Shown: piece by piece, positions 1,448-63,441 of the stretch | Layout of the letters: each line of letters opens with the position of its first letter | Position numbering within the stretch: the stretch's first letter is position 1 | Virus record (IMG/VR): IMGVR_UViG_3300044641_007115 | Coordinates: 1-64,000 of that record | Length of the DNA stretch: 64,000 bases | Strand: one strand, 5' to 3' | The notes under the pieces: generated by a model | What the model was told of the DNA's origin: nothing | The model's database searches: none | What the model saw: only the letters and a program-made list of their open reading frames with translations | Made by a program: the position numbers and the translations under genes

Positions 1448-2026
1448 GTGAGCGAAAGGACTTTTGACATCGAAACAAAGCTAATCGGCCTCTTGCGTCT
1501 ATCCGAATCCAAAACGGAAGGCACGGAGCACGAAGCGGCGCTGGCGCTCGAAACGGCGATCCGGTTGGCGGCAAAGCACGGCATCAAGCTGTCGTCGTTG
1601 AATGATAAGAGAAACGAGTTTTCCAACACGAAAACATGGTTCCGGGGCGGCACTGCATCCAGTTCAGAGACGACTGAATATGTCGCGCCGGAATTCGTAC
1701 AGGTCGCCCGGTGGTGTAAGTTTGCGGAAGCGAATGGGTGGACCCGTTTCCGGCGGACGTATGACGCCAAGGAAGGGACGATCTATGCATATCGTATCGA
1801 GGGACGGACACCAAAACTTGAACTCCGTATCTTTGATCGACCGTGGGGTGATGTTGAATTTGAAGTCGTTCGCAACCCGGACCCGATCATCGGACAGTTC
1901 GAAGTGTGGATGAACAACATTTTCGACGTGATTCATCTTGGAGTGACCTATGAAGACCTTCGAGAGTGGGTGAATATGAATGGGCGGGCATTGCCTTCGA
2001 CAACGCCCCTAAATACTGGTGCATGA
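1448..2026 (+). CDS. DUF2786-like N-terminal domain protein
   Basis: KLIGLLRLSES...EHEAALALETAIRLAAKHGI matches the DUF2786 pattern; likely GTG start at 1448. Confidence 0.6.
   Translation: MSERTFDIETKLIGLLRLSESKTEGTEHEAALALETAIRLAAKHGIKLSSLNDKRNEFSNTKTWFRGGTASSSETTEYVAPEFVQVARWCKFAEANGWTRFRRTYDAKEGTIYAYRIEGRTPKLELRIFDRPWGDVEFEVVRNPDPIIGQFEVWMNNIFDVIHLGVTYEDLREWVNMNGRALPSTTPLNTGA
2009..2015 (+). promoter_or_regulatory. T4-type late promoter motif (C/A)TAAATA, representative of about 15 copies
   Basis: Also at 5986, 13245, 21219, 29583, 30284, 40713, 44396 (+) and 18646, 21191, 37074, 39382, 40655, 57162 (-). Confidence 0.75.
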
Positions 2027-2505
2027 AGCCACCTATTTCCGACCGGATCAACGACGCATTAGGGTTATCGTCGTTTGAAGAATCCGTCGAAGCGATGTCG
2101 CCAACAGTGGATGTTGTTGCACCGGTGCCGACAGATGAGATAGCCCCGGTGTGTGTCGCTACGGGTGACCCGGAGCGGGATGCGGACGCCGATCTCCAGT
2201 ATGCGCGGCAAAATCTTCGGGTGATGCAAGAGAAGGCGCAAGAAGCTGTGGACGCTTGTATGGACTTCGCCCGGCAATCGGACAACCCGAAAGCCTATGA
2301 AGCACTGGCACAAATCCTACAGGCGGGCATTACAGCATCCACGGCTCTGATGGGAGTCAACAAGACCCGCACCGACATTCGACTGAAAAGCGGCAAGGAT
2401 GGTTCTGTCGCTCCGAACGTAAATAATACAGCCGTCGTGATTACGACTACGGATCTTTTGAAAATGGTCCGGGAATCCAACGAAGTTATTGACGCGGAGA
2501 TATAG
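2023..2505 (+). CDS. gp16: Terminase small subunit (T4 gp16-like)
   Basis: DLQYARQNL...A...A...DNPKAYEALAQIL and C-terminal NNTAVVITTTDLLKM; late promoter motif upstream. Confidence 0.8.
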   Translation: MKPPISDRINDALGLSSFEESVEAMSPTVDVVAPVPTDEIAPVCVATGDPERDADADLQYARQNLRVMQEKAQEAVDACMDFARQSDNPKAYEALAQILQAGITASTALMGVNKTRTDIRLKSGKDGSVAPNVNNTAVVITTTDLLKMVRESNEVIDAEI

Positions 2506-2508
2506 AAA

Positions 2509-3576
2509 GTGCCTAATCCCAACACAGCCAAATTCCCATCGGAGTTGCCGACCGATAACGATCTGCAAGTCGCCTCACGGCGCGCAATCGGTAATCTTGA
2601 CGAAGACATCACAACCAATAGCACCACGTTTCGTATCAAGGTTGGGCAAGGCTTGCGCTTTCAGGTACCCTGTCTGATTCAAGTCGATCAGGAAATCATG
2701 CGGGTCAAAGCCAAGACCGGCGACATTCTCCAACAGATCGACCGTGGATTCGCGGGATCGAATGCGACACCGCACTCCAACAACACCGAAATCCGTGGCT
2801 ACATTCTGGACTGGCACCACAATCAGATGGCGGCGGAAATCAAAGCCATCGCTCAGGCGCTTGGTATCAACTTGGCGAATGTGGTGCGACACGTCGATGT
2901 CACGTCCAACGGAGACATCACAGGTGTGTTCAACAACCTTGTGCTGAAGCCGGTTGGCACAGCGGGCACATATGGCGGCGCGGGCAAGTGGCTACAGATC
3001 ACAACCGACTCGAAAGGTCGGGTGGTCTTAGCGACGAATCAAGACGGATACCGATACTTCCCGATCTTCTACAAGGCGGCAATCGTTCAAGGAACAAATG
3101 CGGTCCTTGGTTTTTCATTTGCTAACGTGGATGCGCCGAACGCGGTTCCGGTGACGGGAACAAACGGAAGTCTCTTCGCGGTGGCATCATTCACACAGAC
3201 GAATGAGTATTGGGTACAGGACCATTTCACGCTCCCTGAAGATTGGGATGACGAAGAGCCGGTGACCGTGGATATCATCTGGCGCATCAACGCAACGTCT
3301 GGCAATGTGAAGTGGAAGCTGTGGACGACTTCGATGCGCAACGGATCGGATTCCGATCCGGCTTTCCAGTTAACGCCGGACAGTGTAACGACTACCGTAC
3401 CGACCCCGGCCTATACGGTTGTGCGGTCGATCATTCCGGCGATGCATGTGAATGGATTCCAAGCCGGGGATGAAGTCTTTTTCAAGTTCGCCCGTGCTGA
3501 TGACGACACAGCGGCGGCGGCGGCGGAATTGATTGCTCTGCGGTTCAACATCGCACGTAAGTTCACTTTGTTCTAA
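2509..3576 (+). CDS. Virion structural/tail-associated protein
   Basis: N-terminal ~120 aa paralogous to 13261..14238 (PNPNT..FP...PTD ... HHNQ.AAEI); tail-fibre-like linker GTYG...QITTDSKGRV. Confidence 0.65.
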   Translation: MPNPNTAKFPSELPTDNDLQVASRRAIGNLDEDITTNSTTFRIKVGQGLRFQVPCLIQVDQEIMRVKAKTGDILQQIDRGFAGSNATPHSNNTEIRGYILDWHHNQMAAEIKAIAQALGINLANVVRHVDVTSNGDITGVFNNLVLKPVGTAGTYGGAGKWLQITTDSKGRVVLATNQDGYRYFPIFYKAAIVQGTNAVLGFSFANVDAPNAVPVTGTNGSLFAVASFTQTNEYWVQDHFTLPEDWDDEEPVTVDIIWRINATSGNVKWKLWTTSMRNGSDSDPAFQLTPDSVTTTVPTPAYTVVRSIIPAMHVNGFQAGDEVFFKFARADDDTAAAAAELIALRFNIARKFTLF

Positions 3577-3585
3577 GAGGTACTG

Positions 3586-5940: not shown

Positions 5941-6001
5941 TCACATTTTGATTGTATCCGACACCTACCCCTATGTCAATCCCTTCTAAATAGTTTTCGA
6001 A

Positions 6002-6886
6002 ATGAGCCTTCAATACGCAACTGGAACGAACGTCCATGCTACGGTCGCGGCGGACAACAAGACCACACTGATCGGAAACATCCAAACGCAACTCACAACC
6101 GCCGGATGGACCGTGGTTTCCGGCGGCGGCACAACTGACGTAAGAATGGCATGCGCGGCGACTCCCCAAGGAAATCAAATCCGCGTTCGGATCTTCGACG
6201 GCGGCGGCAACTGTGTTCGCATCCGGGTCATGAATGTCGCGGAAACCATTGTCATGACCGACAGCGGATACCTTCTTCCGGCGACCAGCAAAACCTTCAT
6301 CATCAACGCTACCCGTCATCAGTTTGCGATTTGGTGCGGCGGATCAGACAGCACGCGCGATTTTGTGATGGTGTCAGCAATGTACATTCCGACGCATCTG
6401 ACCGGTATCACCACACTAGCCTTTCTGATGAGTCAATCGGTCAACGATACCGACACGACCGACCGTGGCAGTTTCCGGGTCAGCACTTCCTTGCGTCACC
6501 CGTCGAACGGATTCAATGGAAATTTCTTCGGCTTGGTCAACAGCACGGTTATGGAACATGTCGGTGATGGCACTACGACCGCAAGACAGGGCGTGCCGGG
6601 GCTTCTCTTACCCCGCCCGGCGGATAACACAACGACGCCACAGCAAGCGATGTGGCACGACTCTTCGTCGTTCATCTTGGAGCCGCTGATGGGATGGGGT
6701 CTTTCGGACATCAATGATCCGTGGCGGATCTACGGCCAAATCTGGAATGCGGCGATCAACACCGAAGCGTTCACGATGGATCAGGTGCCGACCGCATTCA
6801 ACGGGAAGAACTGGATCAACCTGACCAGCAACAACACCGGCAACAACTATTCGGCCCGTGGAAGCCTGTTCTTGACCACACCGTAA
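6002..6886 (+). CDS. Tail-associated protein, QY-family paralog 1 (short form)
   Basis: Shares PQG..R.RI.D.G.NC and C-terminal W.A.I....G.NW..IT.NN.G...GSLF with three downstream genes. Confidence 0.65.
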   Translation: MSLQYATGTNVHATVAADNKTTLIGNIQTQLTTAGWTVVSGGGTTDVRMACAATPQGNQIRVRIFDGGGNCVRIRVMNVAETIVMTDSGYLLPATSKTFIINATRHQFAIWCGGSDSTRDFVMVSAMYIPTHLTGITTLAFLMSQSVNDTDTTDRGSFRVSTSLRHPSNGFNGNFFGLVNSTVMEHVGDGTTTARQGVPGLLLPRPADNTTTPQQAMWHDSSSFILEPLMGWGLSDINDPWRIYGQIWNAAINTEAFTMDQVPTAFNGKNWINLTSNNTGNNYSARGSLFLTTP

Positions 6887-11430: not shown

Positions 11431-13248
11431 GTGCCGGGAAGACAGACATTCACGCTTCAGCTAATTTCGAATAGCTGGACAGCGAATACGACAGCAATTC
11501 AAGCCATCAGCACAGACATGCGCGGTGGCTTTGTTGCTATTCCGTCTTCCCTTTCCTTCACATCGGCTAGCAAGCTATCGCGGGGCGGCGGTGGTGTTTT
11601 TGACTTTGTGTCTAGTAATGGATTGCGTCCTGATGCAAATGCAATTGGTACCTACAAACTCTGGACGGGTACCGATGACACGGACGTTCCACAATTCCTT
11701 ACAGTTATACCCACAACTGTCAATTTGTTCACCACAGCACCGATTTTTACTGACACCGAATTCATATTTGTTGTGTACGGTTCGTGGGATGACAGTATTT
11801 TCACATGGAACGATGGTGATAGTGTCTGGACGGCAGGGTGGAGTGCAATTCCGTCGTCTCTTTCTTTCACAGCGACCAGTAAGCTGTCACGGGGCGGTGG
11901 CGGCGTCATTAGTATTCTCAATAGTCGTAACAGCGTTACTAACGAAGGAAACGTTTTCGGAAACTATTTCTTTGAAACCGGCACACTACAGGCATCGGGC
12001 GGCGGTGACGTTATCAATGGCACCGCTGCGATCACCGTTTCGTTGCAAGTCGGGGCGGGTGTTCTCATCAACGGGGCGGCATCTTTTTCTGCCACTGGAA
12101 ATCTTACCGCAATCCTGACCAAAGAAGAAACCGGCGTACCATCTTCCGTCGCGGTAGCGGGAACTCTCACCTGTAACGCGAATGCTTCCGTGACGATTGA
12201 AACGGGAATGTATGGCGGCATCGTGACCAACAACCGGTTTGTAGAACCACAAGAAACCATTGCCGGATCGATGGTGCTCAGCGGAGTCACGGCGCGTTTC
12301 AGCGATCTATACTCCGGTTACTACGACCGTCGCTTGGTGTGGGGGTATACGAACTACCCCGCCGCCAACTTTAGACAGCCCCGTTCTGTCTTGATGACCG
12401 GGTATGATTGGAGTTCAGTCAATCTGAACGTCTACAGTGTCATGGAAGAAGATGTTACCCCAACGTCCAGTACGTTGGGCGGCGTCACATCATGGACATC
12501 AGATTTCTATTCGGGATACACCGCAAATCAAGTCGGTACGTTAGACACCCTGACTTATGCAAGAGCTACACAAGTCGTTAGCGAAGTGCTGGCGCAAGTC
12601 AGTTCTAATGCTCGGTTATCACAGGTCGCACATGAAGTTTTGGTGTCACCGGGGAGCCGGGCGCGCCACACTCAAACGGCGGTTGAAGTTCTCCGTCAAA
12701 TTAACGTTGGATGGATTCAGCAAGAAGCGGTTGAGGCCATTGGCAATCAGATCAGCGCATTGCGGTATGCGTTAATCCAACAATGCGCCGTGGAAGTCAT
12801 GTACTCCATCAAGGCCAAAGTCAATCTGACCCAAGTCGCAACCGAACTTCTGAAGGGAGCAAATCCGAATCCGCCTGTGAACGTCACTTCGGTGGCGACG
12901 GAAGTACTTCGTCAAAGAACAGAAATCGACACAACCCCGTCTTTCGTGCAACAGGTGGCTCTTGAATCTTTGCGGAACGCTCCGAACCCGCCCGCCGTTA
13001 TCAACCACATGGCGCTGGAATATGTCGTTCAGCCGTACCCGCCCGCCGTTATCAATCATGTGGCGCTGGAATGGTTCCGTAACGCAACAAGCATCCCGGC
13101 GGTCATCAATCACGTGGCGCTCGAAAAGAGCCGAACGGCGGATATTACACCGGCATTGGTTCATCACATCGCCGTCGAAATACTGGTCCGGCCAGAATTC
13201 GACCCAACGGTGTCGAGCCTTATCAACAACCCGAAGTTTTACTTCTAA
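11431..13248 (+). CDS. Repeat-containing virion structural protein
   Basis: Duplicated AIPSSLSFT..SKLSRGGGGV motif; C-terminal ~20-aa repeats (PAVINHVALE; Q.A.EVL). Confidence 0.6.
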   Translation: MPGRQTFTLQLISNSWTANTTAIQAISTDMRGGFVAIPSSLSFTSASKLSRGGGGVFDFVSSNGLRPDANAIGTYKLWTGTDDTDVPQFLTVIPTTVNLFTTAPIFTDTEFIFVVYGSWDDSIFTWNDGDSVWTAGWSAIPSSLSFTATSKLSRGGGGVISILNSRNSVTNEGNVFGNYFFETGTLQASGGGDVINGTAAITVSLQVGAGVLINGAASFSATGNLTAILTKEETGVPSSVAVAGTLTCNANASVTIETGMYGGIVTNNRFVEPQETIAGSMVLSGVTARFSDLYSGYYDRRLVWGYTNYPAANFRQPRSVLMTGYDWSSVNLNVYSVMEEDVTPTSSTLGGVTSWTSDFYSGYTANQVGTLDTLTYARATQVVSEVLAQVSSNARLSQVAHEVLVSPGSRARHTQTAVEVLRQINVGWIQQEAVEAIGNQISALRYALIQQCAVEVMYSIKAKVNLTQVATELLKGANPNPPVNVTSVATEVLRQRTEIDTTPSFVQQVALESLRNAPNPPAVINHMALEYVVQPYPPAVINHVALEWFRNATSIPAVINHVALEKSRTADITPALVHHIAVEILVRPEFDPTVSSLINNPKFYF

Positions 13249-13260
13249 ATACCAGTCAGC

Positions 13261-14238
13261 ATGGCGAACCCAAATACTTCAACATTCCCGTATGCGATCC
13301 CCACGGATTCTATCCTCATGGTCGCATCGGACAATGCGCAATCCCCACTCACGGCGGATATCGACGACACCCAAACTTCGATCCCTGTCAGCGACGGTTC
13401 GGTGTTTGAAACGCCGTGTCTCATTGGCATCGACGACGAAATCATTTCCGTAGCCGGTCGGAGCGGGAACAATCTCACTCCATGCATTCGCGGTGTTAGC
13501 GGCACCACGGCGGTAGCCCACACCGACAATACCCCGGTATTGGGTTATGTCTTTGCATACCACCACAACCAAGTCGCGGCGGAAATTCAATCGTTGAGCG
13601 GATTCACTTTTCAGAACGCCATGCGCGGGTTGGATCGGCTGGAAAACCTTCTCTCCTACAGCGAAGAATTAGAAAATGTGGCGTGGAACAAATACACCGG
13701 GACTACGGTACCGGCCACAAATATCGCGGCACCGAACGGGACCAATACCGGGCGGCGGCTCTTGGAAGGAAGTGGTTCGGGTCGTCATGGTGTGGGAGCC
13801 AGCTATAGTACTCTGACCGATGGCACGGCTATCGTCATCAGCGTCTATGCCAAGAAACAATCTTTGGATTGGATTTGTATCGGCCAAAACATCAACGGAG
13901 AAACCGGTCGCCGGGCATGGTTCAACATCAACACCGGAACGATTGGCACCGTAGGAGCCAGCGCTAAGGCCACCATCGTCGATGTTGGCAACGGATGGTA
14001 CCGCTGTTTGGTCGAAACAACCCAAACTACGAACGTCACCAAAACATTCGATATCGTCATGACAACGGGCGATAGCACGGTGACGTATAACGGGACTTCC
14101 ACAAATGCCACCTACTTTTGGGGAGCACAAGTTCGGCAAGGAACCATGAACGAAAAACAGCAGTACGTTGTCACCACCGGAACCACGGTTTCCGTACAAC
14201 AGGGCGGCATCGTCCTAGATGAAGGGGATTTGAGCTAA
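13261..14238 (+). CDS. Tail-associated protein with carbohydrate-binding-like beta-sandwich
   Basis: N-terminus paralogous to 2509..3576; ENLLSYSEEL...W and DVGNGWYRC...WGAQV..G typical of phage tail CBM-like modules. Confidence 0.65.
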   Translation: MANPNTSTFPYAIPTDSILMVASDNAQSPLTADIDDTQTSIPVSDGSVFETPCLIGIDDEIISVAGRSGNNLTPCIRGVSGTTAVAHTDNTPVLGYVFAYHHNQVAAEIQSLSGFTFQNAMRGLDRLENLLSYSEELENVAWNKYTGTTVPATNIAAPNGTNTGRRLLEGSGSGRHGVGASYSTLTDGTAIVISVYAKKQSLDWICIGQNINGETGRRAWFNINTGTIGTVGASAKATIVDVGNGWYRCLVETTQTTNVTKTFDIVMTTGDSTVTYNGTSTNATYFWGAQVRQGTMNEKQQYVVTTGTTVSVQQGGIVLDEGDLS

Positions 14239-15884: not shown

Positions 15885-15908
15885 ACCGCACACGTCCTAA
15901 ATGTCTTT

Positions 15909-16379
15909 GTGCAACTAGGACAGCAATTCGTTCTGCTCTACAAAGAGTCTAAGGGACCTTCACGGGCTTTCGCATGTGAAATCATTCACATAGAAGAGAA
16001 AGACGTGAAGGTCGCTGTGTTTCATCCCGGCGAAGACTTCCGTATCATCAACGCGACGATGGAAGGAAAATTTTTGATCGGTCCACGCGACACGTACATG
16101 GAACTCAAAGATCCGAACGTCAAAGAGAAAGTGACCATCGCCAGATTCCGGGATACTGTACTTGCCCGGCTAACAGAGGCCGAACGGCGCGCCTATGAGA
16201 ATCCGGCGGGCGACAAGAAAAAGAAACCGAAGTCCACAGCGGTTCTTCCCGTACAGGAATCTATACCGGAGCCGCCCAAGGTGACCAAGAAAGCAAAGGA
16301 ACCCGCGCCAGCTAAAAAAGCCCCGGCGAAAAAAGCCACTAAGAAAGCGGCCAAGAAAAGTCCGAAGAAAAAAGCCTAG
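15909..16379 (+). CDS. Hypothetical protein with histone-H1-like Lys/Ala tail
   Basis: C-terminus PAKKAPAKKATKKAAKKSPKKKA; CTAAATG motif 5 nt before GTG. Confidence 0.6.
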   Translation: MQLGQQFVLLYKESKGPSRAFACEIIHIEEKDVKVAVFHPGEDFRIINATMEGKFLIGPRDTYMELKDPNVKEKVTIARFRDTVLARLTEAERRAYENPAGDKKKKPKSTAVLPVQESIPEPPKVTKKAKEPAPAKKAPAKKATKKAAKKSPKKKA

Positions 16380-16559: not shown

Positions 16560-16898
16560 CTACTTTTTATACCACTTCTGTTCGTCTAGCTTGATTCCCT
16601 TTGACAGACAGGCGTCATGAAACTTCTGATAGAACTCTTGCGCATAGGTTTGGCTGTCCATGTTGATCGGCCAGTGCCACGGCGCTCCTAACAAGTCTTC
16701 GACGATGCTGTCGATCAAGATGTCCCGGTCGATGGTATCGCACACATCATCCGGCGAATCCCGCTTGGTGACCGGATGCCGGTCGGAGTACAGCTTGATC
16801 TGTTCGTTGGTGAGAATGATGCCAAAATGACGTTGCATCGTTTCCCGAACGTTGGTGTAGACCGGCGGCGCGGCTTTCTTCGTTGCGGCTTTTGCCAT
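16560..16898 (-). CDS. Hypothetical protein
   Basis: Packed ORF downstream of a divergent promoter. Confidence 0.55.
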   Translation of the reverse strand: MAKAATKKAAPPVYTNVRETMQRHFGIILTNEQIKLYSDRHPVTKRDSPDDVCDTIDRDILIDSIVEDLLGAPWHWPINMDSQTYAQEFYQKFHDACLSKGIKLDEQKWYKK

Positions 16899-16906
16899 GA
16901 AAAAAG

Positions 16907-16947
16907 AGTATCACATATTGACTTGTATGTCAAATGTGTGGTATACT
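16907..16947. promoter_or_regulatory. Overlapping divergent sigma70-type promoters
   Basis: + strand TTGACT-N18-TATACT; - strand TTGACA...GATACT. Confidence 0.6.
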
Positions 16948-18352: not shown

Positions 18353-18640
18353 CTATTCTGCGGCGACGACTTCACTCAAAATATCCCCGGTGGCGATCAA
18401 GTTTCCAGTCGCATCGATCTTCATCAGATGCGGAACTTTGCGGATCGAAAACCGGCGGACCAAATCCGAAGAAGAGTTGACATCCACAAATAGCGCTGTG
18501 ATTTTGGTCGGGTCTAATCCACCTACTCGTTTCACCATGCGTGCGCTTAGCACACTGCCGGGCATCACAAATACAAGGAGAATGGGGAGTTTCGATGCTT
18601 TGATAGCGGCATCAATGGTGTTGGCGTCAACGGTGGTCAC
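18353..18640 (-). CDS. Thioredoxin-fold protein lacking CxxC
   Basis: PILLVFVMPGSVLS in place of WCGPC; VDVN....LVRRFSIRKVP. Confidence 0.6.
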   Translation of the reverse strand: MTTVDANTIDAAIKASKLPILLVFVMPGSVLSARMVKRVGGLDPTKITALFVDVNSSSDLVRRFSIRKVPHLMKIDATGNLIATGDILSEVVAAE

Positions 18641-18654
18641 ACACCTATTTAGGG

Positions 18655-20626: not shown

Positions 20627-21181
20627 TTACACCAACTTGTTTTCCTTCATGAGCCGGATCAACTGGTCTTCCAGCATCGGCGTATGTTTCTTGTCGATCA
20701 ATCGAATGTTCCGCTTCGCGTCGTTCTCTGCCACCAAGAAATCATATAGTGTCACCCGCTTGCGTTCGTTCACCGGGGTACGGACAAACGTGTCGTAGTC
20801 GATCTGGACGCCGTGGATGTCTTCGTAGTGATGAAGGGTCTGATAGGTATAAATCAGACCGTCTTGCTGTGGCGTGGTGTATTGCGCCCGAATGTATGCG
20901 ATGAAATCTTCATAGGACAGCGGCCAGTCGGTGTACGGGTTGATGATGTCATTCGCCAGAAGAACGATCCAGTGATACCCGGTCCAGCCGTAATAGCGAT
21001 GGGCTATGTCTTCGATCCGTTCGCCATCCTTGACGGAGTACTCATACATTTCGAGCATTTCCGTCTTGATGACATCGCGGATCTTCACCCGCTGAAGGAT
21101 GTTCACCGTCGCCCGAAGGTTGTTGTCGTCCAACATGTCGTATTGGACAAACGGAATCGTTGAAAAGAAAGGAGTCGGCAT
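20627..21181 (-). CDS. gp53: Baseplate wedge subunit
   Basis: FF..IP...Y; LysM-like Y.VKDGERIEDIAHRYYG; HHYE; END.KRNIRLI. Confidence 0.85.
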   Translation of the reverse strand: MPTPFFSTIPFVQYDMLDDNNLRATVNILQRVKIRDVIKTEMLEMYEYSVKDGERIEDIAHRYYGWTGYHWIVLLANDIINPYTDWPLSYEDFIAYIRAQYTTPQQDGLIYTYQTLHHYEDIHGVQIDYDTFVRTPVNERKRVTLYDFLVAENDAKRNIRLIDKKHTPMLEDQLIRLMKENKLV

Positions 21182-21230
21182 CGCTTCTGGTATTTACCTA
21201 CGACCCCGGAACCGCCCATAAATAACCTAT

Positions 21231-21671
21231 GTGCCGTGGCAAGGACAGTTTCGACCCAAGAATCCGGGCAAATACGTTGGCGACGTAAACGCCATCTACT
21301 ACCGCTCATCGCTGGAATACCGGCTGATGAAGCATCTTGACGCTCACCCGGATGTCCTGCATTGGAATTCGGAAGAAGTGGTCGTCCCGTATGTAAAGCC
21401 GACCGATAATCGCATCCACCGATATTTCGTGGACATGGTGGCACAGGTCAAAAGGCAAGACGGTCAGATCAAAACCTACTTGATCGAAGTCAAACCCTAC
21501 GACCAGTGTTTCCCGCCCAAGCAACCGAAGACGCGCAAACAGAGCGCCCGGTACTTAGGCGAAATGGCTACCTATGCTGTCAATCAGGCGAAGTGGAACG
21601 CCGCCAAAGAATTTTGCAAGAAACAGGGTTGGGAATTCACTGTGATGACCGACCGGGAGTTGAGATACTAG
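21231..21671 (+). CDS. gp4: Head completion protein (TnsA-like nuclease fold)
   Basis: F.PKNP.KY.GD...I.YRSS.E; W.SEE..VPY; LIEVKP..Q; NQAKW.AA. Confidence 0.9.
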   Translation: MPWQGQFRPKNPGKYVGDVNAIYYRSSLEYRLMKHLDAHPDVLHWNSEEVVVPYVKPTDNRIHRYFVDMVAQVKRQDGQIKTYLIEVKPYDQCFPPKQPKTRKQSARYLGEMATYAVNQAKWNAAKEFCKKQGWEFTVMTDRELRY

Positions 21672-29563: not shown

Positions 29564-29596
29564 ACATTATCTTAGTTCGGACCTAAATACGGTTCA

Positions 29597-30277: not shown

Positions 30278-30298
30278 TAACCCATAAATATCACCCGA

Positions 30299-30628
30299 AT
30301 GGAAATGCTAACACCACAAGAACAAGAATCGTTACAGATGGCGACGATCTGTAGCGAATGCCGTTGGGGAATCTTTCATCGTGAAGAGCACGATGGACTA
30401 ATCGTTCGGATGGAAACTCCACTTTGCGGCCACCAAAGTTCATTGATCGGTCGTAACTTCGTCACTGGTGAATTCAAATTCAAGCCGTGCGAAACCATCA
30501 ATCAAATCGGCAACTGTCACATCTTTGAACCGAAGCTGCATCCGAATCAGGAAAACGTCATCGCCCATGATGGTGTTTCGTTCAATGACGATCAAGAAAT
30601 ACTGGACGGAGACGACGACACTCAGTAG
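30299..30628 (+). CDS. Hypothetical Cys-rich protein
   Basis: CSEC...C...C...C; late promoter motif 8 nt upstream. Confidence 0.5.
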   Translation: MEMLTPQEQESLQMATICSECRWGIFHREEHDGLIVRMETPLCGHQSSLIGRNFVTGEFKFKPCETINQIGNCHIFEPKLHPNQENVIAHDGVSFNDDQEILDGDDDTQ

Positions 30629-37067: not shown

Positions 37068-37116
37068 AACCTGTATTTAGGTCATCCCCATCCCGGAGGG
37101 ACGACTAAATCTTGGT

Positions 37117-39381: not shown

Positions 39382-39411
39382 TATTTATACATACCGCCGG
39401 GCGGATGTCAA
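39382..39411 (-). promoter_or_regulatory. tRNA operon promoter: TTGACA -35 with TATAAA -10 overlapping a T4 late TATAAATA
   Basis: ttgacatccgcccggcggtatgtataaata on the - strand. Confidence 0.7.
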
Positions 39412-39743: not shown

Positions 39744-40649
39744 TCACGATCCGATGACTTTGGAATTCCACTTTCCGAAATCCCGGCCACCGATAGTCGG
39801 AGCGGGTTTGTTCGGGTTGAAGAAGTCGTCCTTGGCCTTCTGATCGACGGCTCTTTCATCGGTCGTGTTCATCGTCCACAACTGAACAGCACTCTTCCGA
39901 TCCGTCAACAGCATGTCTTTCGTCTTGTCACTTACGCCGTAACGGGTCGCCGGTAATGTCCGGCTGAGTGTAATCCGGGTTGCCAGTTTCGATACCGGGA
40001 CGAAAAACGCGGTGATCTCCATGTCGTACTTGATCCAAAGATGACGCAAGGTCGCTTTGAGTTCATTGGCCTTGGCTTTCCATGTCGGCATCAGAACAGA
40101 GTATTGCATGTCGCTCCGGTTGGTATCGATATAGGTCACCAATACACATGGCTTGCCGGTCACATGTTGCATTTCTTCCGGGCTAATCGTGTCCGACACC
40201 GGCACCGGACGACCGAACTCTTTGGATACAGAATGTACTTTCGTCAAGAAGCGTGATCCGTGGTTCTCGAACCAATACCCCTGTGTGATGAGGTACGCAT
40301 GGACCATTTCATGCAGAAGAATGCCGTCCCACTTCCATTCCGGTCGCACCGGCACAGCCGTGCTCATGGTGATCTTCAGGTCATAGACTTCGCCGTTCAT
40401 CTTCGTGTACGCGGCCAGCGAACCAGACGGTTTTCGTTCGCCCGGTGCTAGTTTGAATTTGCCAGTCGTTGTACCAGATACCGCCTTGCCAGTCTTTCCC
40501 CACACCACCGGCATATTGTTCGGGATCGCGCTATCGAAGAACAGCTTGTTGAACAATTGGAACTTCTTCACCAACGGATAGTCTTTGAATGGCAAGACTT
40601 CATCGCTAGTGTGTCCTTCCCGGATGAAATGTCGATATGTCTTGAACAC
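39744..40649 (-). CDS. SprT-like zinc metalloprotease with capsid-targeting-like N-terminus
   Basis: ILLHEMVHAY...HG..F; LFN..FF...P; start MFKTYRHFIRE. Confidence 0.8.
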   Translation of the reverse strand: MFKTYRHFIREGHTSDEVLPFKDYPLVKKFQLFNKLFFDSAIPNNMPVVWGKTGKAVSGTTTGKFKLAPGERKPSGSLAAYTKMNGEVYDLKITMSTAVPVRPEWKWDGILLHEMVHAYLITQGYWFENHGSRFLTKVHSVSKEFGRPVPVSDTISPEEMQHVTGKPCVLVTYIDTNRSDMQYSVLMPTWKAKANELKATLRHLWIKYDMEITAFFVPVSKLATRITLSRTLPATRYGVSDKTKDMLLTDRKSAVQLWTMNTTDERAVDQKAKDDFFNPNKPAPTIGGRDFGKWNSKVIGS

Positions 40650-40725
40650 TCAGATATTTAGGATGACACAGAAAATTTGAGTGCAATCGGTTTCCATCGG
40701 TTTCATCGGGTTCTAAATACATGTC

Positions 40726-41124
40726 ATGCCAGCAGGAAAAACCAATTCGTATAGCGATTCCGTCCTCAATCTTCTACGCGGATCAAATGTCACCGCGTTT
40801 TCTCCCTACGTGGGACTGATGTCGGTCGCTCCAACCGACGACAATTCGACAGGAACCGAACTGAGTGGAAGCGGCTACAGTCGGCAAAGTATCACTTTCG
40901 GCGCTCCTGCCGATGAAGGAACCGGCGGACGCAAAGTCTCAAACACGAACGTGATTCGTTTTGGCCCGGCTTCTGCCAATTGGAGTGCAGCGGTTGCTTT
41001 CGGCATCTATGATGCGGCGTCCAGCGGCAATCTTCGATATTGGGGAACCATGACTACTGTCACCGTGGTGTCGAGTTCATCCCTTGAAATCGCTATTGGA
41101 GACTTGTCAGTCGTCGAAGACTAA
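40726..41124 (+). CDS. Small virion structural protein (paralog of 6906/7305)
   Basis: PYVGL....PTD...GTELSG.GY.RQ...F...GIYDAA..GNL. Confidence 0.7.
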   Translation: MPAGKTNSYSDSVLNLLRGSNVTAFSPYVGLMSVAPTDDNSTGTELSGSGYSRQSITFGAPADEGTGGRKVSNTNVIRFGPASANWSAAVAFGIYDAASSGNLRYWGTMTTVTVVSSSSLEIAIGDLSVVED

Positions 41125-43058: not shown

Positions 43059-44399
43059 ATGCCATATTTTGACCGGCAAGTATTCAACAAATACTTCACC
43101 CCGTACATCGTTCCACAAGAGGGGACGGGTAGTGCTGTTTTACTAAGAACCTTCAGCCGGTCACAAGCTCAAGTACAAGCAAGCCAAATTTACCGCCGGA
43201 ATTTGCAAAGTCTTTCGACTTCTCAGCTTCAAACGACACCGGTCTTGCTACAGTTTTCAGACGGGATTACTTCGGCGGATAGCGCGGCCACGATCACCCA
43301 AGCTGGTATCTATTTTTCCCGGCAAACCCGAACAAGTAGTAGCAGTCAGATCAAAATCGACAATCGATCTGTCCTGTTCAATCGGGCCATCACTTCAATC
43401 AGCAAAGGAACTCTATCGGTCAGCACCACCGCGACCTATTTCCGGGTGCTCAAGTCAGATGCACGCGGTAGTGTTACCATTTCAGCATCTTCAATCGACA
43501 GTCGTATTCTGACAGCGATTGGCAATTCGGCTGTCTCTTCAACGTTTCGCATCATCTGGTTCGCCAGCCTTCAAACACAAAGCCAATCGGTCGCCACCCT
43601 CACCGCATCGTTACGATTCTTCTTTGAAGCTATTGGAAATTCCAGTACCGCCATCAATGCCGCTCAGTTGTTTTTCAACCGACAACCACGGGCGACAGGT
43701 GCCGGTCAGACCACCATCACGGCAAGTTTGATCCAGTATCGCTCCGCGTCTTTCCTTGGAAAATCTGAGACACGATTGACACCTTTGGTGTTGATCCCGA
43801 CCGATATGGTTTCATTCGCGGATAGTCAAACTGATCTTGTCGCCAATCTGGTCATGCTACGGACGGCAACATCACAAGGTCGCAGCGAAGTCAAAACAAA
43901 CACCGTTCTGGTTCGTCCACTGAGCCTGAACACTAGTGGTCAGAGCCAAACACAGTTGTTGGCTACCGGCCTATACTTTGCCGATGTCTCTTCAAACGGA
44001 TCTTCCCGATTGACAGGGACGACCATGCTCGTTTTCCAAGCTGTTCCAAAAACAACTGGCGGATCAAGCACGTCAGTCTTTGGGAAAATCATTTGGAACG
44101 CCAATGTACAGACATCAGGTGCATCGAATATCGAATTGGGGTATACCTACATCTTTGAAAGAACAGCACAGGCTGTCAGTCGGAGTATTGCTCAATCGAA
44201 CTTCTACACCGTGGCAAACACCACGCTAAAGAGTCAAGCAAACAGCAACACATTTGCCGATTCTACCGTCATGCTGCCTAGCGGCCAGATGGTCAGCCGG
44301 GGACGTAGTGCGATGAAGAGAGAGTCCAATAACGTGATTTTCTTGGGCAACATCAACAACTCTTCGGTCCACATCGGAAACAAGATCGCCATCAGCTAA
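43059..44399 (+). CDS. Ser/Thr-rich repetitive beta-structured virion protein
   Basis: Low-complexity ~20-aa beta repeats. Confidence 0.55.
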   Translation: MPYFDRQVFNKYFTPYIVPQEGTGSAVLLRTFSRSQAQVQASQIYRRNLQSLSTSQLQTTPVLLQFSDGITSADSAATITQAGIYFSRQTRTSSSSQIKIDNRSVLFNRAITSISKGTLSVSTTATYFRVLKSDARGSVTISASSIDSRILTAIGNSAVSSTFRIIWFASLQTQSQSVATLTASLRFFFEAIGNSSTAINAAQLFFNRQPRATGAGQTTITASLIQYRSASFLGKSETRLTPLVLIPTDMVSFADSQTDLVANLVMLRTATSQGRSEVKTNTVLVRPLSLNTSGQSQTQLLATGLYFADVSSNGSSRLTGTTMLVFQAVPKTTGGSSTSVFGKIIWNANVQTSGASNIELGYTYIFERTAQAVSRSIAQSNFYTVANTTLKSQANSNTFADSTVMLPSGQMVSRGRSAMKRESNNVIFLGNINNSSVHIGNKIAIS

Positions 44400-44408
44400 A
44401 TACTCGAC

Positions 44409-44678
44409 ATGCCGGACAATTTTGCCGTTTTCAAAACCAATCTTGAGTCGCCCGCGACGAACGCATACTTGGTCGCCCCGAACGACAGTGCCGATCTGCC
44501 TGTCACGACTAGAGCGCTCATGGTCAATGCGGACGGTAGCGTCAAAATGGAATTCGCCAAAGATCCATCTGGATCATTCGTGACGATTGCGCTGAAAGCT
44601 GGTCAAACCTACCCATTCCGTATTCGAAAAATCTATTCGAACGGCACCAACGCAACTGGTATCACAGCACTGTACTAG
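44409..44678 (+). CDS. Head-spike base protein (RcGTA Rcc01079-like)
   Basis: ESPA..A..V.PNDS.DL...TRAL.V...G.V......G..P.R..KI...GT.ATGI.AL. Confidence 0.7.
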   Translation: MPDNFAVFKTNLESPATNAYLVAPNDSADLPVTTRALMVNADGSVKMEFAKDPSGSFVTIALKAGQTYPFRIRKIYSNGTNATGITALY

Positions 44679-44797
44679 TAGTCGGTCACGCGGCGGATCA
44701 TGGCGGCAACCCGGCGGCGCTGATTCACCTTACCAACGTGCATCACAATCGCGGCGATTGCAAGCAAAAACAACAACAACAAACTGTAGTTCATCAT
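44675..44797 (-). CDS. 40-aa single-TM peptide (not in ORF track)
   Basis: MMNYSLLLLFLLAIAAIVMHVGKVNQRRRVAAMIRRVTDY*; ATG 6 nt after a TTGACA-N17-TATACT promoter. Confidence 0.55.
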   Translation of the reverse strand: MMNYSLLLLFLLAIAAIVMHVGKVNQRRRVAAMIRRVTDY

Positions 44798-44863
44798 AGT
44801 TCTAGTATAGAAGTTTTGTACCTATATGTCAATAGGTCCCTGTGGAAAACTTCCAAGAGAAAC

Positions 44864-56913: not shown

Positions 56914-57153
56914 CTAGCGGCGGTCCTCTACGAATTCTTTGAAAGATTTGACTGGACGGTGGAAGGCGGCTTCAAACGCGGCGGGTGTGTCGCCCGGACG
57001 ATAGTACGTCTCACCCTGATATTCGACCGGGTGAGAGCCATGAAGTCCCATCTGCATCGCGGCCCAATCCGCTTCGTTACGGATGCGATACAGACTCAGA
57101 CTTCCTATCACGATCCCTTCACGGAATCGTTTGTACAAATGAGGACGACCCAT
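56914..57153 (-). CDS. Hypothetical late protein (MGRPHLY...)
   Basis: ATAAATA 8 nt before ATG. Confidence 0.5.
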   Translation of the reverse strand: MGRPHLYKRFREGIVIGSLSLYRIRNEADWAAMQMGLHGSHPVEYQGETYYRPGDTPAAFEAAFHRPVKSFKEFVEDRR

Positions 57154-57214
57154 TCGCGAAGTATTTATCGGAATGGGTCGTTTTCGGAAAACGAGTTGTT
57201 GGGGTTTGGATCTT

Positions 57215-59693: not shown

Positions 59694-59996
59694 TTAGATG
59701 TCGTGGAATTGGTCGTGTTGGTAGGTGTGAAGAAAAACGCGCTTCCAGTCGTTGCCGTCGAAGTTTTCGGTGTAGATCAGACCCTCTTCGATCAGGTGAC
59801 CGACAGCGGCGTTCACCGCACGCGGGGCAACGTTGAGTTTCTTGGCAACGTCTTCGACGCGCACATCACTGAAGAAAGGTTCGGCGTACAGGCCGGAATG
59901 GATGGCTTCGTAGACTTTCGCGCTGAATTCGGGGAGTTCAGCAAGGCGGGCTTGGCACTCTTCAAGGTTCGCGACGCGGGGCTTTTTGTTCTTCAT
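59694..59996 (-). CDS. Winged-helix DNA-binding protein
   Basis: VEDVAKKLNVAPRAVNAAVGHLIEEGLI. Confidence 0.7.
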   Translation of the reverse strand: MKNKKPRVANLEECQARLAELPEFSAKVYEAIHSGLYAEPFFSDVRVEDVAKKLNVAPRAVNAAVGHLIEEGLIYTENFDGNDWKRVFLHTYQHDQFHDI

Positions 59997-60039
59997 ATCG
60001 TCTCTCCACTGTTAGGATAGCAAGAGAACGACTTATATG

Positions 60040-60261
60040 TCAAACACTTTTTTCGATTTCTTCGAAGACCGAATCGGGGACCTTTTCAAAAAAGACGACG
60101 CCGGGTCCGCAATTGTGTTGAATCACAATCATCCCGGCGTCTTCGAGCAATTTCCGCACATCGTCTGGTCCATGAATGAACCGTGGATCAATGTTCGGTG
60201 TTCTGTCCGTTCGCTTCTTCCGCGTCAATTGTTGGCAGATTTTCCATAGGATTTCCCGCAT
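60040..60261 (-). CDS. Possible small hypothetical protein
   Basis: Overlaps the RNA ligase 3' end. Confidence 0.3.
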   Translation of the reverse strand: MREILWKICQQLTRKKRTDRTPNIDPRFIHGPDDVRKLLEDAGMIVIQHNCGPGVVFFEKVPDSVFEEIEKSV

Positions 60262-61846: not shown

Positions 61847-62572
61847 ATGAAGGATTCTCTAGGCGACCGGATGAAAGGGAAGTACGAAGACCCTTTCCGA
61901 AACGTACTTCCCCAACGGACCAATCTCATCATTCGCATCGACGGACGGGCATTTCACACGTTCACGAAACCGTTCAAACGTCCTTACGACGAAGAGATTC
62001 ATGAAGCTATGTCCTTTGCCACCCGGATGGTGTGCGAAGAGATCGGTGGATGCAAGTTCGCATACACCCAAAGCGACGAAGCCAGCTTTCTTGCCACCGA
62101 CTACGATACACACGAAACACAGATGTGGTTCGGCGGGAACAAGGCTAAGATCGAAACCATTGCGGCGTCGGCATTCACAGCGTTCTTCAACTACTCCATG
62201 ATGAAGATTTCCCCTACTCTCATCGCACAGTTTGATGCCCGCGCCTTCATCATTCCAACACAGCACGAAGTCGTCAACTACTTCATTTGGCGGCAACAGG
62301 ATGCCATCCGCAACAGCGTGTCGATGTTGGCCCGTCACCACTTCAGTGCCAAGCGGCTACACAAAGTCTCATCGAAAGATGCTATCGACCTCTTGCGTAA
62401 AGAGAAGAAAGTTCGGTGGGAAGAAGATACCCCTGCATGGTTCCGCCGGGGAACTGCCCTCTACAAAAAAGCACCGGGCCGTCACAAAGTCCCAAACTGG
62501 TATACTGACAAAAACATCCCGGAGTTCGTCGGGAATCAAAATTTCGTGCGGCAACATATGCCTATCGAATAA
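61847..62572 (+). CDS. thg1: tRNA(His) guanylyltransferase Thg1-like protein
   Basis: LGDRMK.YE; IRIDGRAFHTFT; YTQSDE.S; WFGG...K; FDARAF; YF.WRQ.DA.RNS. Confidence 0.95.
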   Translation: MKDSLGDRMKGKYEDPFRNVLPQRTNLIIRIDGRAFHTFTKPFKRPYDEEIHEAMSFATRMVCEEIGGCKFAYTQSDEASFLATDYDTHETQMWFGGNKAKIETIAASAFTAFFNYSMMKISPTLIAQFDARAFIIPTQHEVVNYFIWRQQDAIRNSVSMLARHHFSAKRLHKVSSKDAIDLLRKEKKVRWEEDTPAWFRRGTALYKKAPGRHKVPNWYTDKNIPEFVGNQNFVRQHMPIE

Positions 62573-62590
62573 AGGAAAGGTGAAACGCCC

Positions 62591-62722
62591 GTGGTTTTGT
62601 GGATTGGTATCGGATCATTTCTGTTAGGGTTGGTCGTAGGATCTGTCATCTGTTTCTTCTACTACCAGAAATCCTTCAGCAAGAAGTTGAAAGGTCTATC
62701 AGTTCGTTTTCGCCGCGACTAA
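62591..62722 (+). CDS. 43-aa single-TM peptide (not in ORF track)
   Basis: MVLWIGIGSFLLGLVVGSVICFFYYQKSFSKK...; AAGG upstream. Confidence 0.45.
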   Translation: MVLWIGIGSFLLGLVVGSVICFFYYQKSFSKKLKGLSVRFRRD

Positions 62723-62730
62723 ATGTCAGC

Positions 62731-63441
62731 GTGCAACGAATCGACAGACGAATCAAAGGAACTACGATCAATGAACTCTATGCGCCCTATCGGAACGCAT
62801 ACGATCTTCTCGAACCGATAAGAGATAGTAGTCTTCGCCCGACCGGTGTATACGACGCCATCATCGCGGATGGTGGCGTCACCAAGAATGGACGCCGGTA
62901 CAGCCGCAAGGACTTCCTCAACGCCCAACGTCTATACTTCTCAAACCAGCCTGTCATTGAAGCGGGACAAGATCCTCTTGGCGTCTGCCTTGCCGATGAA
63001 TTCTACCCGGACGGCACGCTACGACTGGATCGCATGATCGGCCAAGTCATCGACATGAAAGTTGTAGACGCGGACAACAGTTGGTATGTGACCATTCGTT
63101 TCGCCATCCATGACATGACCACGCGCGCGAATCCTTGGTACGAAACCATGCAGCCGATCTTCACCAAGCTGCACGGTCACTACAAAGCGATTCCTAGCGG
63201 AATTGTGCCAGACAACTCCGGGGCTATTGTGAACGAGAATGGGGTGGAAGTGGTGACTGGTTTCATGTTGCGGTCGATCATCTTGTCGTGCAACTCCGCA
63301 TTCGAAAAAGCAAACGCGGTTCAGCCGGTATACATGGACGGTGGAAGGATGTCTGCCACCACAACATCCGCGCGCCCGCCGTTGCCACAGCGCCAAACGT
63401 CAATGCAACGCGGGTCAATCTTCGACCGACGACCGATCTAA
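62731..63441 (+). CDS. Divergent prohead-protease (T4 gp21)-like protein, catalytic motifs not evident
   Basis: KNGRRY, L.LDR...V..M.V, N.NG..VV..F.L...AF..A layout; CTAAATG 5 nt before GTG. Confidence 0.4.
   Translation: MQRIDRRIKGTTINELYAPYRNAYDLLEPIRDSSLRPTGVYDAIIADGGVTKNGRRYSRKDFLNAQRLYFSNQPVIEAGQDPLGVCLADEFYPDGTLRLDRMIGQVIDMKVVDADNSWYVTIRFAIHDMTTRANPWYETMQPIFTKLHGHYKAIPSGIVPDNSGAIVNENGVEVVTGFMLRSIILSCNSAFEKANAVQPVYMDGGRMSATTTSARPPLPQRQTSMQRGSIFDRRPI

What the first reader, a model, noticed from the sequence alone, without database searches (positions are those of the whole stretch)
2009..62731. Late genes appear systematically leaderless
Seen: a T4-like late motif (C/A/G)TAAAT(A/G) sits 5-9 nt before the start codon, with no SD between, for at least 15 genes. 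Gaps are: 2023 (7), 6002 (9), 13261 (9), 15909 (5), 18640 (5), 21181 (9), 21231 (5), 29597 (7), 30299 (8), 37067 (6), 40649 (5), 40726 (6), 44409 (6), 57153 (8), 62731 (5). Established: T4 late transcription starts about 6 nt after TATAAATA, and T4 late mRNAs normally have SD leaders. Inference: first genes of late operons are translated as leaderless or near-leaderless mRNAs, which could bypass shut-off of SD-dependent initiation.
Basis: partly seen in the sequence, partly recalled or inferred. Interest (0 to 1): 0.62.

Follow-up and report, generated by a model that had tools for sequence, protein, structure and literature searches.

The report
Late promoters abutting start codons
In this 224-kb T4-like phage the T4-type late-promoter box TAAATA sits 5-9 bases before the start codon of about 40 genes. 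These genes are therefore most likely made as messenger RNAs with no ribosome-binding leader, a layout shared with SAR11 pelagiphages but not with T4 itself.

Summary
All 15 sites exist, and 14 of the 15 gaps are exact.

- **Enrichment.** Genome-wide, TAAATA ranks first of 4096 hexamers for lying 5-9 nt before the first start codon of an ORF (28/55 against 1.4% background, P about 2e-37). It is almost absent from gene interiors (5/55).
- **Late machinery.** The phage (224,490 bp, distant T4-like) encodes gp55, gp33 and gp45 homologues.
- **Promoter role.** The same motif lies 27-44 nt upstream of the strongly SD-led sheath, tube and major-capsid genes, so it is the late promoter.
- **Spacing.** T4's box spans -13 to -6. 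A gap of 5-6 nt (28 of 39 sites) therefore puts the transcription start on the start codon.
- **Start codons.** They are confirmed by orthologue N-termini. Downstream SD-led alternatives are essentially absent (2/43).
- **Relatives.** The layout is conserved in metagenomic relatives and in pelagiphage HTVC008M. It is absent from T4, Aeh1, Syn9, phiM12, Cr30, RSP15 and X1.

- The most abundant late proteins keep SD leaders.
- Sigma70-type early promoters also abut start codons in at least 9 cases. Leaderless expression is thus not late-specific, and the idea of bypassing an SD shut-off is unsupported.

No RNA evidence could be obtained.

The parts
2010..2025 (+). CTAAATA box (2010-2015), 7-nt gap, ATG 2023. 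The start overlaps the stop of the upstream ORF (ATGA).
5987..6004 (+). CTAAATA box, 9-nt gap, ATG 6002 (294-aa protein, first start of the ORF).
13246..13263 (+). CTAAATA box, 9-nt gap, ATG 13261 (325-aa tail/baseplate-like protein). The TAA of the box is the stop codon of the upstream gene. Box, gap and start are conserved in relative L010.
15898..15911 (+). CTAAATG box, 5-nt gap, GTG 15909 (156 aa). Conserved, including G at box position 6 and the GTG, in L010.
18638..18651 (-). CTAAATA box, 5-nt gap, GTG 18640 (95 aa). Conserved in L010 and L009.
21179..21196 (-). GTAAATA box, 9-nt gap, ATG 21181: gp53 baseplate wedge homologue. One half of a divergent pair in a 49-bp intergenic region.
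21219..21233 (+). ATAAATA box, 6-nt gap, GTG 21231: gp4 head-closure homologue. The GTG is an ATG at the same position in L010. The N-terminus MPWQGKF is conserved.
29584..29599 (+). CTAAATA box, 7-nt gap, ATG 29597 (Amidase_2, 226 aa).
30285..30301 (+). ATAAATA box, 8-nt gap, ATG 30299 (109 aa).
37065..37079 (-). CTAAATA box, 6-nt gap, ATG 37067 (161 aa). Divergent pair with 37117.
37106..37119 (+). CTAAATC box, 5-nt gap, GTG 37117 (HNH endonuclease-like, 215 aa).
40647..40660 (-). CTAAATA box, 5-nt gap, GTG 40649 (SprT-like, 301 aa). Divergent pair with 40726.
40714..40728 (+). CTAAATA box, 6-nt gap, ATG 40726 (head-protein-like, 132 aa).
44397..44411 (+). CTAAATA box, 6-nt gap, ATG 44409 (89 aa).
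57151..57167 (-). ATAAATA box, 8-nt gap, ATG 57153 (79-aa ORF filling an otherwise empty gap). The start is supported only by a GC-position switch.
62720..62733 (+). CTAAATG box, 5-nt gap, GTG 62731. An in-frame GTG lies upstream at 62599, but coding-type GC3 begins at 62731. The weakest of the 15 sites.
32640..32885 (-). gp33 late-transcription co-activator homologue (PF16805, 49.6 bits). gp55 (genome 82673-83251) and gp45 (genome 91211-91990) lie outside the window.
39382..39387 (-). ATAAATA box just upstream of the tRNA cluster (39190 down to 37743, minus strand). Probably a late promoter for the tRNAs rather than for the 65-aa ORF 3 nt away.
1375..1410 (-). Early-type promoter abutting a start: TTGACA, 17 nt, GATAAT, 6 nt, then GTG 1375.
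16898..16933 (-). Early-type promoter abutting a start: TTGACA, 17 nt, TACTCT, 6 nt, then ATG 16898.
44797..44832 (-). Early-type promoter abutting a start: TTGACA, 17 nt, TATACT, 6 nt, then ATG 44797.
59996..60043 (-). Contrast case, an early-type promoter with an SD leader: TTGACA, 18 nt, TATCCT, then a 17-nt stretch carrying GGAGAG, then ATG 59996.

Best explanation
(C/A/G)TAAATA is the -10-type late promoter read by host RNA polymerase carrying the phage's gp55 sigma, helped by gp33 and the gp45 clamp. There is no -35 element.

In about 40 genes (14-16 in the window) the box lies 5-9 nt, mostly 5-6 nt, before the start codon. Initiation about 6-7 nt past the box then yields mRNAs whose 5' end is the start codon or lies up to about 4 nt before it. 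Such mRNAs have no room for an SD and would be translated by the leaderless pathway, in which 70S ribosomes with initiator tRNA bind a 5'-terminal AUG or GUG.

The phage runs two tiers of late expression:
- Classical leaders with strong SDs for high-copy virion proteins (sheath, tube, major capsid, head-assembly proteins).
- Leaderless transcripts for low-copy or enzymatic late proteins (portal, large terminase, gp53, gp4, gp48-like, amidase, peptidase).

The same geometry at sigma70-type early promoters shows that leaderless expression is a general habit of this phage, and presumably of its host.

Shown: the motif, its spacing, the encoded machinery, start-codon validity, conservation. Inferred: the positions of transcription starts, translation of the leaderless forms, and the dosage rationale.
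For: 1. **Statistics.**
2. **Machinery.** gp55 (34% identity to T4, E 2e-22; Sigma70_r2), gp45 and gp33 are present.
3. **No upstream element.** No column upstream of the box is conserved. The base before it is C/A/G and almost never T. Aeh1's late promoter is likewise CTAAATA (PMC1524935).
4. **Same box on SD-led genes.** It lies 27-44 nt upstream of AGGAG/GAGG-led sheath, tube, T4_CASP-domain protein and Gp23 major capsid genes. There it can only be a promoter.
5. **Geometry.** T4's box spans -13..-6, so a 5-nt gap predicts +1 on the start codon. The observed mode is 5-6 nt. Positions 6 and 7 after the box are mostly C, G or A then mostly A, G or T: 18 and 25 of 39 are purines.
6. **Promoter confined to a tiny interval.**
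   - Divergent pairs sit in intergenic regions of about 38-76 bp that hold two opposed boxes; for the three pairs in the window no sigma70-like site was found.
   - Terminator, then box, then start at genome 169929 and 112352.
   - tRNA end, then box, then ATG at 212260.
7. **Starts are real.**
   - Orthologue alignments begin at residue 1 on the box-adjacent codon for gp4, gp53, 13261, 15909 and 18640.
   - Profile alignments reach the N-terminus for portal, gp4, gp53 and DNA polymerase.
   - Only 2 of 43 genes have a downstream SD-led alternative.
8. **Conservation.** Box, gap and start are kept while flanks diverge, in relatives whose G+C ranges from 35% to 53%.
9. **HTVC008M.** It has ATAAATAG plus a gap of 5 before the annotated starts of gp2, gp4, gp48, the tape measure and a baseplate wedge gene.
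10. **Independent promoter class.** TTGACA-17-TAnnnT promoters show the same geometry: the gap from the -10 end to the start is 4-6 nt in 9 of 19 assignable cases (P 1e-8), the other mode being 17 nt with GGAGAG.
Against:
- The distance from box to transcription start is taken from T4, whose gp55 is only 34% identical.
- 12 of 39 box-adjacent starts are GTG. This codon is a poor leaderless start in E. coli (my knowledge), though accepted in mycobacteria.
- Gap-9 sites would carry 3-4 nt leaders, which in E. coli reduce leaderless translation.
- Many of these genes lie in same-strand runs and could also be read from upstream transcripts.
- A few box-adjacent genes are not classical late genes (DNA polymerase with TAAATT, an HNH endonuclease, a cytidyltransferase).
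Confidence: 0.7

Rival explanations
1. The UAAAUA element acts on the RNA as a non-SD translation-initiation signal (an A/U-rich ribosome or S1 landing site) on longer transcripts. Its fixed spacing to the start codon would then reflect ribosome geometry rather than the transcription start.
For: A gap of 5-9 nt overlaps the range in which SDs sit. SD 4-mers in this genome peak at 7-11 nt. Several sites lie inside same-strand gene runs.
Against: - The element is an exact hexamer whose first three positions are invariant and which matches T4/Aeh1 late promoters.
- It also occurs 27-44 nt upstream of SD-led genes, where it cannot be a ribosome site.
- Sigma70-type -10 hexamers of quite different sequence show the same 4-6 nt spacing.
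- Divergent pairs, and the terminator-then-box and tRNA-then-box arrangements, need a promoter exactly there.
Confidence: 0.08
2. The boxes are real late promoters, but most protein from these genes comes from longer read-through transcripts by translational coupling or re-initiation. The leaderless transcripts would be a minor or non-productive by-product.
For: Stop-start overlaps or short distances to the upstream gene occur at some sites: ATGA at 2023, and the TAA of the box serving as the upstream stop at 13261.
Against: - This does not explain why spacing is so tightly held at 5-6 nt and conserved across relatives.
- Coupling is impossible for divergent pairs and for sites preceded by a terminator or a tRNA.
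Confidence: 0.12
3. One reading: leaderless late mRNAs exist to escape a phage-imposed shut-off of SD-dependent initiation.
For: None beyond the absence of SDs at these genes.
Against: - The most abundant late genes (sheath, tube, major capsid, T4_CASP protein) depend on strong AGGAG leaders.
- Early sigma70-type promoters are also leaderless in at least 9 cases.
Confidence: 0.04
4. Artefact: the start codons are mis-assigned and the true starts are downstream SD-led codons, or the pattern is chance.
For: Automatic gene calls in relatives L008 and L009 chose downstream starts with a GGAG for the gp4 homologue.
Against: - Those calls delete the conserved N-terminus MPWQGKF.
- Only 2 of 43 genes have any downstream SD-led start, against an 11% baseline.
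- Chance is excluded.
Confidence: 0.02

Closest known systems
T4 late promoters (TATAAATA at -13..-6; gp55 sigma, gp33 co-activator, gp45 sliding-clamp activator)
   Same: A single -10-type box with no -35 element. gp55, gp33 and gp45 homologues are encoded. The box precedes virion genes. A subset (sheath, tube, major capsid) keeps the T4 layout of promoter, 27-44 nt leader and SD.
   Different: The core is (C/A/G)TAAATA rather than TATAAATA. Twenty-eight of the 55 exact boxes abut the start codon (gap 5-9), whereas in T4 only 2 of 225 TAAATA copies lie 4-10 nt from a first start and the gaps cluster at 12-35 nt.
Aeromonas phage Aeh1 late promoter CTAAATA (Nolan et al. 2006, PMC1524935)
   Same: The same 7-mer with C at -12, in a T4-like phage.
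   Different: In Aeh1 the box lies 16-60 nt from start codons, with none at 4-10 nt. SD hexamers dominate the -4..-7 region.
Leaderless mRNAs of Actinobacteria, Deinococcus-Thermus and Caulobacter, and lambda cI from PRM (my knowledge)
   Same: A -10 element at a fixed short distance from the start codon, no SD, and a 5'-terminal start codon. This phage's own sigma70-type early promoters show the same layout.
   Different: Here the promoter is a phage-sigma (gp55) late promoter, and the arrangement is used for dozens of late virion and assembly genes of a T4-like phage. I found no report of this in the searched library.
Pelagimyophages (HTVC008M, Mosig) and Methylophilales phage Melnitz
   Same: A spike of TAAATA at exactly 5 nt from first starts: HTVC008M 12, Mosig 6, Melnitz 3. 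In HTVC008M this falls before gp2, gp4, gp48, the tape measure and a baseplate wedge gene.
   Different: - These are AT-rich 141-147 kb genomes in which SD hexamers still rank first. In the present phage TAAATA itself ranks first.
- Late-promoter prediction in pelagimyophages was reported as unsuccessful (PMC7029224).

Membership tests
T4-type (gp55-dependent) late promoter | The phage encodes a gp55-family sigma factor. | tested here: met
   Genome 82673-83251: 34% identity to T4 gp55 over residues 5-153, E 2e-22. Sigma70_r2 at 24.5 bits against a cut-off of 24.
T4-type (gp55-dependent) late promoter | gp33 co-activator and gp45 sliding clamp are encoded. | tested here: met
   gp33: PF16805 at 49.6 bits, window 32658-32843 minus strand. 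gp45: 30% identity, E 9e-13, genome 91274-91867.
T4-type (gp55-dependent) late promoter | A TATAAATA-like -10 box with no conserved -35 or other upstream element. | tested here: met
   The core TAAATA has positions 1-3 invariant, A>G at 4, T>C at 5 and A>C,T>>G at 6. No upstream column is conserved, and the preceding base is C 20, A 11, G 8, T 0. The first two T4 positions (TA) are not conserved, as in Aeh1.
T4-type (gp55-dependent) late promoter | Located upstream of late (virion, assembly, lysis) genes. | tested here: met
   Found before portal, large terminase, gp53, gp4, gp48-like, tail sheath, tail tube, Gp23 major capsid, T4_CASP protein, amidase and peptidase. A few non-late genes also carry it (DNA polymerase with TAAATT, HNH endonuclease, cytidyltransferase).
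T4-type (gp55-dependent) late promoter | Replication-coupled transcription that initiates about 6 nt past the box late in infection. | not testable with these tools
Leaderless mRNA | The transcript 5' end coincides with the start codon (5' UTR of 0 to about 5 nt). | not testable with these tools
   Inferred only: T4's box spans -13..-6 and the gaps are 5-9 nt. If the box is the -10 element, the leader cannot exceed the gap.
Leaderless mRNA | No Shine-Dalgarno sequence upstream of the start. | tested here: met
   42 of 43 sites have no GGAG, GAGG or AGGA at -4..-16. The one exception is an AGGA at a spacing of 3.
Leaderless mRNA | The promoter -10 element lies at a fixed short distance from the start codon across many genes. 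| tested here: met
   Gap 5 = 13, gap 6 = 15, gap 7-10 = 11. Sigma70-type promoters have gaps of 4-6 nt in 9 cases.
Leaderless mRNA | The start codon is AUG, as leaderless translation in E. coli requires. | tested here: inconclusive
   26 ATG, 12 GTG, 1 TTG. GTG starts at 21231 and 15909 are confirmed by orthologues. Whether the unknown host translates 5'-terminal GUG cannot be tested here.

The most novel reading that the evidence does not exclude
In this clade of T4-like phages, which reaches cultured SAR11 pelagiphages, the site of transcription initiation decides whether dozens of genes can be translated.

- ORFs without an SD stay silent on read-through RNA. They become translatable only when a gp55 late promoter, or in some cases a sigma70 early promoter, puts their AUG or GUG at the 5' end.
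- This would give a built-in temporal gate.
- It would also give a two-tier dosage system: SD leaders for proteins needed in hundreds of copies, and leaderless transcripts for proteins needed in a few copies.
Probability: 0.35. Interest if true: 0.75.

Novelty: new variant of a known kind. Interest (0 to 1): 0.62.

Why it matters
- **A new expression layout for T4-like late genes.** T4 late transcription is a textbook system in which late mRNAs carry SD leaders. A lineage whose late promoters are fused to start codons would be the first case, as far as I could find, of gp55-driven leaderless expression on a genome-wide scale. It suggests a simple way to set protein dosage and timing.
- **A practical annotation consequence.** Gene callers that rely on SDs truncate such genes, as seen for gp4 in two relatives. 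The motif can be used to correct start codons in this clade.
- **A host clue.** It points to a host that translates leaderless mRNAs well.

Tried and rejected
- **Close relatives.** Megablast of the window against the phage collection found nothing. The IMG/VR scan returned only 98-100% identical contigs, useless for conservation. Relatives at 25-86% identity came from the protein word search and contig look-ups instead.
- **Literature.** A search for 'CTAAATA' returned only primer noise.
- **Pattern counts.** Pattern-only counts in five more phages were uninformative in AT-rich genomes. They were replaced by whole-genome ORF-aware analysis.
- **TAAATG.** As a general variant it is not enriched (2/26).
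- **Gap-3 sites.** They are incompatible with a start 6-7 nt past the box.
  - Two resolve to an in-frame ATG at gap 6 (genome 65364, 122615).
  - One is probably the tRNA-cluster promoter (39387).
  - The rest are treated as chance.
- **Stop-codon by-product.** I rejected the idea that the pattern follows from TAA stop codons near gene starts. Other TAA-containing hexamers (TAAAAA, TAAAGA) are at background, and the gap-5 peak is out of frame.
- **Host.** Host identification was not pursued; the only clue is a permuted tmRNA.

Full report
**What the window is.** The window is the first 64 kb of a single-contig IMG/VR virus record of 224,490 bp. G+C is 52.7% and CheckV completeness is 96%. Its proteins place it as a distant T4-like myovirus: gp2 DNA end protector, gp53, gp4, an RnlA-like ligase, and a tail protein whose best matches (23-27% identity) are in pelagiphages, cyanophages and Caulobacter phage Cr30. 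It encodes the full T4 late-transcription set:
- gp55 sigma at genome 82673-83251 (34% identity to T4 gp55, E 2e-22; Sigma70_r2);
- gp45 clamp at 91211-91990;
- gp33 co-activator inside the window at 32640-32885, minus strand (PF16805, 49.6 bits).

**Checking the observation.** All 15 sites are in the sequence as described. Fourteen of the 15 gaps are exact; 21231 has a gap of 6.
- In the window, TAAATA-N5-9-RTG occurs 16 times against 2.2 +/- 1.5 in shuffles.
- Across the genome I asked, for every one of the 4096 hexamers, how often it lies 5-9 nt before the first start codon of an ORF of at least 60 aa. TAAATA ranks first (28 of 55 copies against a background of 1.4%, P 1.9e-37). Behind it come its overlapping versions and then SD hexamers.
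- Only 5 of 55 copies lie in gene interiors, which make up 82% of the genome (P 3e-32).
- Allowing any sixth base gives 39 sites: gap 5 = 13, gap 6 = 15, gap 7 = 2, gap 8 = 2, gap 9 = 6, gap 10 = 1. Fourteen are in the window.
- Single-base variants show that box positions 1-3 are essential. TAAACA, TAAGTA, TAAATC and TAAATT keep some association. TAAATG does not (2/26).
Even so, 15909 is conserved with the same gap and GTG in a relative, and at 62731 and 57153 coding-type GC3 begins exactly at the proposed start.

**Are the start codons right?**
- Only 2 of 43 box-adjacent genes have any in-frame SD-led start within the next 40 codons, below the 11% random baseline.
- tblastn alignments to relatives begin at residue 1 on the box-adjacent codon for 13261, 15909, 18640, gp53 (21181) and gp4 (21231).
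- The gp4 N-terminus MPWQGKF and the gp53 N-terminus MPTPFFS are conserved directly after that codon. The window's GTG at 21231 is an ATG at the same position in a relative.
- PHROG profile alignments reach the N-terminus for portal, gp4, gp53 and DNA polymerase.
- Automatic calls in two relatives chose downstream GGAG-preceded starts for gp4 and so cut off the conserved N-terminus.

**Is the box a promoter?** Several independent lines say yes.
- It equals the T4 late consensus minus its first two bases and is identical to the CTAAATA late promoter of Aeh1 (PMC1524935). Nothing upstream of it is conserved.
- The same box lies 27-44 nt upstream of strongly SD-led genes for the tail sheath, tail tube, a T4_CASP head-assembly protein and the Gp23 major capsid protein. 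There it can only act as a promoter.
- Five divergent gene pairs have intergenic regions of about 38-76 bp holding two opposed boxes, each 5-10 nt from its gene: 21181/21231, 37067/37117, 40649/40726, genome 174269/174318 and 217513/217552. For the three pairs in the window no sigma70-like promoter was found.
- At genome 169929 and 112352 an intrinsic terminator directly precedes the box. At 212260 a tRNA 3' end does.

**Does that make the mRNAs leaderless?** T4's box spans -13 to -6, so five bases separate it from +1. A gap of 5 puts +1 on the first base of the start codon; a gap of 6 puts it there or one base before; a gap of 9 gives 3-4 nt. The observed mode of 5-6 is what this geometry predicts without any fitting. 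After the box, position 6 is C 16, G 11, A 7, T 5 and position 7 is A 17, T 13, G 8, C 1, so 18 and 25 of 39 are purines, the usual initiating bases. If the box is the -10 element, the leader cannot be longer than the gap in any case, which is too short for an SD.

A second, unrelated promoter class gives the same picture. The phage's sigma70-type promoters (TTGACA, 17 nt, TAnnnT) fall into two groups. One has 17 nt carrying GGAGAG before the ATG. The other has only 4-6 nt between the -10 hexamer and the start: 9 of 19 assignable cases, P 1e-8. Examples are window 1375, 16898 and 44797 on the minus strand. Two different -10 elements at the same short distance from start codons point to coincidence of transcription start and start codon, not to an RNA-level role of UAAAUA.

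**Comparison with other phages.** I applied the same ORF-aware analysis to ten T4-like genomes.
- T4, Aeh1, Syn9, phiM12, Cr30, RSP15 and X1 have TAAATA-to-start gaps spread over about 12-60 nt. SD hexamers dominate the -4..-7 region, except in Syn9 where no hexamer stands out.
- Pelagiphage HTVC008M has a sharp spike at a gap of 5 (12 genes). The annotated starts of gp2, gp4, gp48, the tape measure and a baseplate wedge gene fall exactly there, including a divergent gp2/gp4 pair 26 bp apart.
- Mosig has 6 such genes and Melnitz 3.
- Metagenomic relatives of the present phage (25-86% identity in the marker protein, G+C 35-53%) keep box, gap and start at orthologous genes while the flanks diverge. 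Some orthologues have moved the box further away.
- A pelagimyophage survey reported that late-promoter prediction was unsuccessful (PMC7029224). I found no paper describing leaderless late genes in T4-like phages.

- The arrangement is not universal among late genes. Of the 55 exact boxes, 28 abut a start, 13 are leadered (at least six with clear SDs) and 14 are unassigned.
- The leadered ones serve the proteins needed in the largest numbers. The box-adjacent ones serve portal, large terminase, baseplate and head-completion proteins and lysis enzymes.
- This split suggests dosage control, and perhaps gating of translation by the site of initiation. That is inference.
- Leaderless geometry is not confined to late genes.
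- Both facts argue against escape from an SD shut-off.

**Limits.** No transcript ends were seen. The box-to-start distance is borrowed from T4. Twelve of the 39 starts are GTG, and the host's ability to translate 5'-terminal GUG is unknown.

**Unexplained detail.** Gap 5 goes with GTG (9 of 13) and gap 6 with ATG (12 of 15), Fisher P 0.02.

Noticed in passing
window 44946-45187 (-): The phage encodes a permuted (two-piece) tmRNA: Rfam RF04321 at 98 bits, and ARAGORN gives the tag ANSNVLAMAA. This may hint at a host lineage that uses permuted tmRNA.
   Followed up: partly
window 37743-39190 (-) and 39382-39387 (-): A cluster of 9-10 tRNA genes (Thr x3, Asp x2, Cys, Ala x3) is preceded by an ATAAATA box. 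The tRNAs may be transcribed from a late promoter.
   Followed up: no
genome 165952, 167863, 188200, 198653, 201259, 201792, 203288, 219061; window 60043 (-): A highly conserved early cassette, TTGACATATA(A/G)GTC...TA(T/C)TCTGA(C/G)TATGGAGAGACGA(C/T)ATG, is repeated at least 10 times before small ORFs. Many of these ORFs begin MNN or MKK.
   Followed up: partly
genome 80365-80550 (+) and 211380-211574 (+), outside the window: Two short ORFs match pieces of the Gp23 major-capsid Pfam model (45.9 and 31.5 bits), in addition to the full gene at 159899-161233.
   Followed up: no
genome-wide box-adjacent sites: Gap 5 pairs with GTG starts (9 of 13) and gap 6 with ATG starts (12 of 15), Fisher P 0.02. 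Unexplained.
   Followed up: partly
window 51918-51932 (-): TAAATA, 6 nt, then ATGCCAGC opens only 19 codons. Its first codons resemble those of the gene at 40726 (ATGCCAGCAGGA). The called gene downstream (51476-51898) starts at a TTG. This could be a frameshift, an assembly error or a short upstream ORF.
   Followed up: no
window 35591 (-), 48023 (+); genome 79468, 91999, 133936, 191274: A variant CTAAAC(A/T) lies 5-8 nt before start codons. TAAACA is linked in 10 of 40 copies. It may be a weaker or differently timed promoter.
   Followed up: partly
loci L008 9306-9402 (-) and L009 7433-7478 (-): Public gene calls for the gp4 homologue in two relatives start at a downstream GGAG-preceded codon, which removes 15-32 conserved N-terminal residues. 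Starts in this clade are probably mis-annotated systematically.
   Followed up: yes
window 24974-29086 (+): A 1370-aa protein carries Peptidase_M23 and glucosaminidase-type domains. It looks like a tape-measure or tail-lysin protein, and its size varies (1160-1370 aa) among relatives.
   Followed up: no
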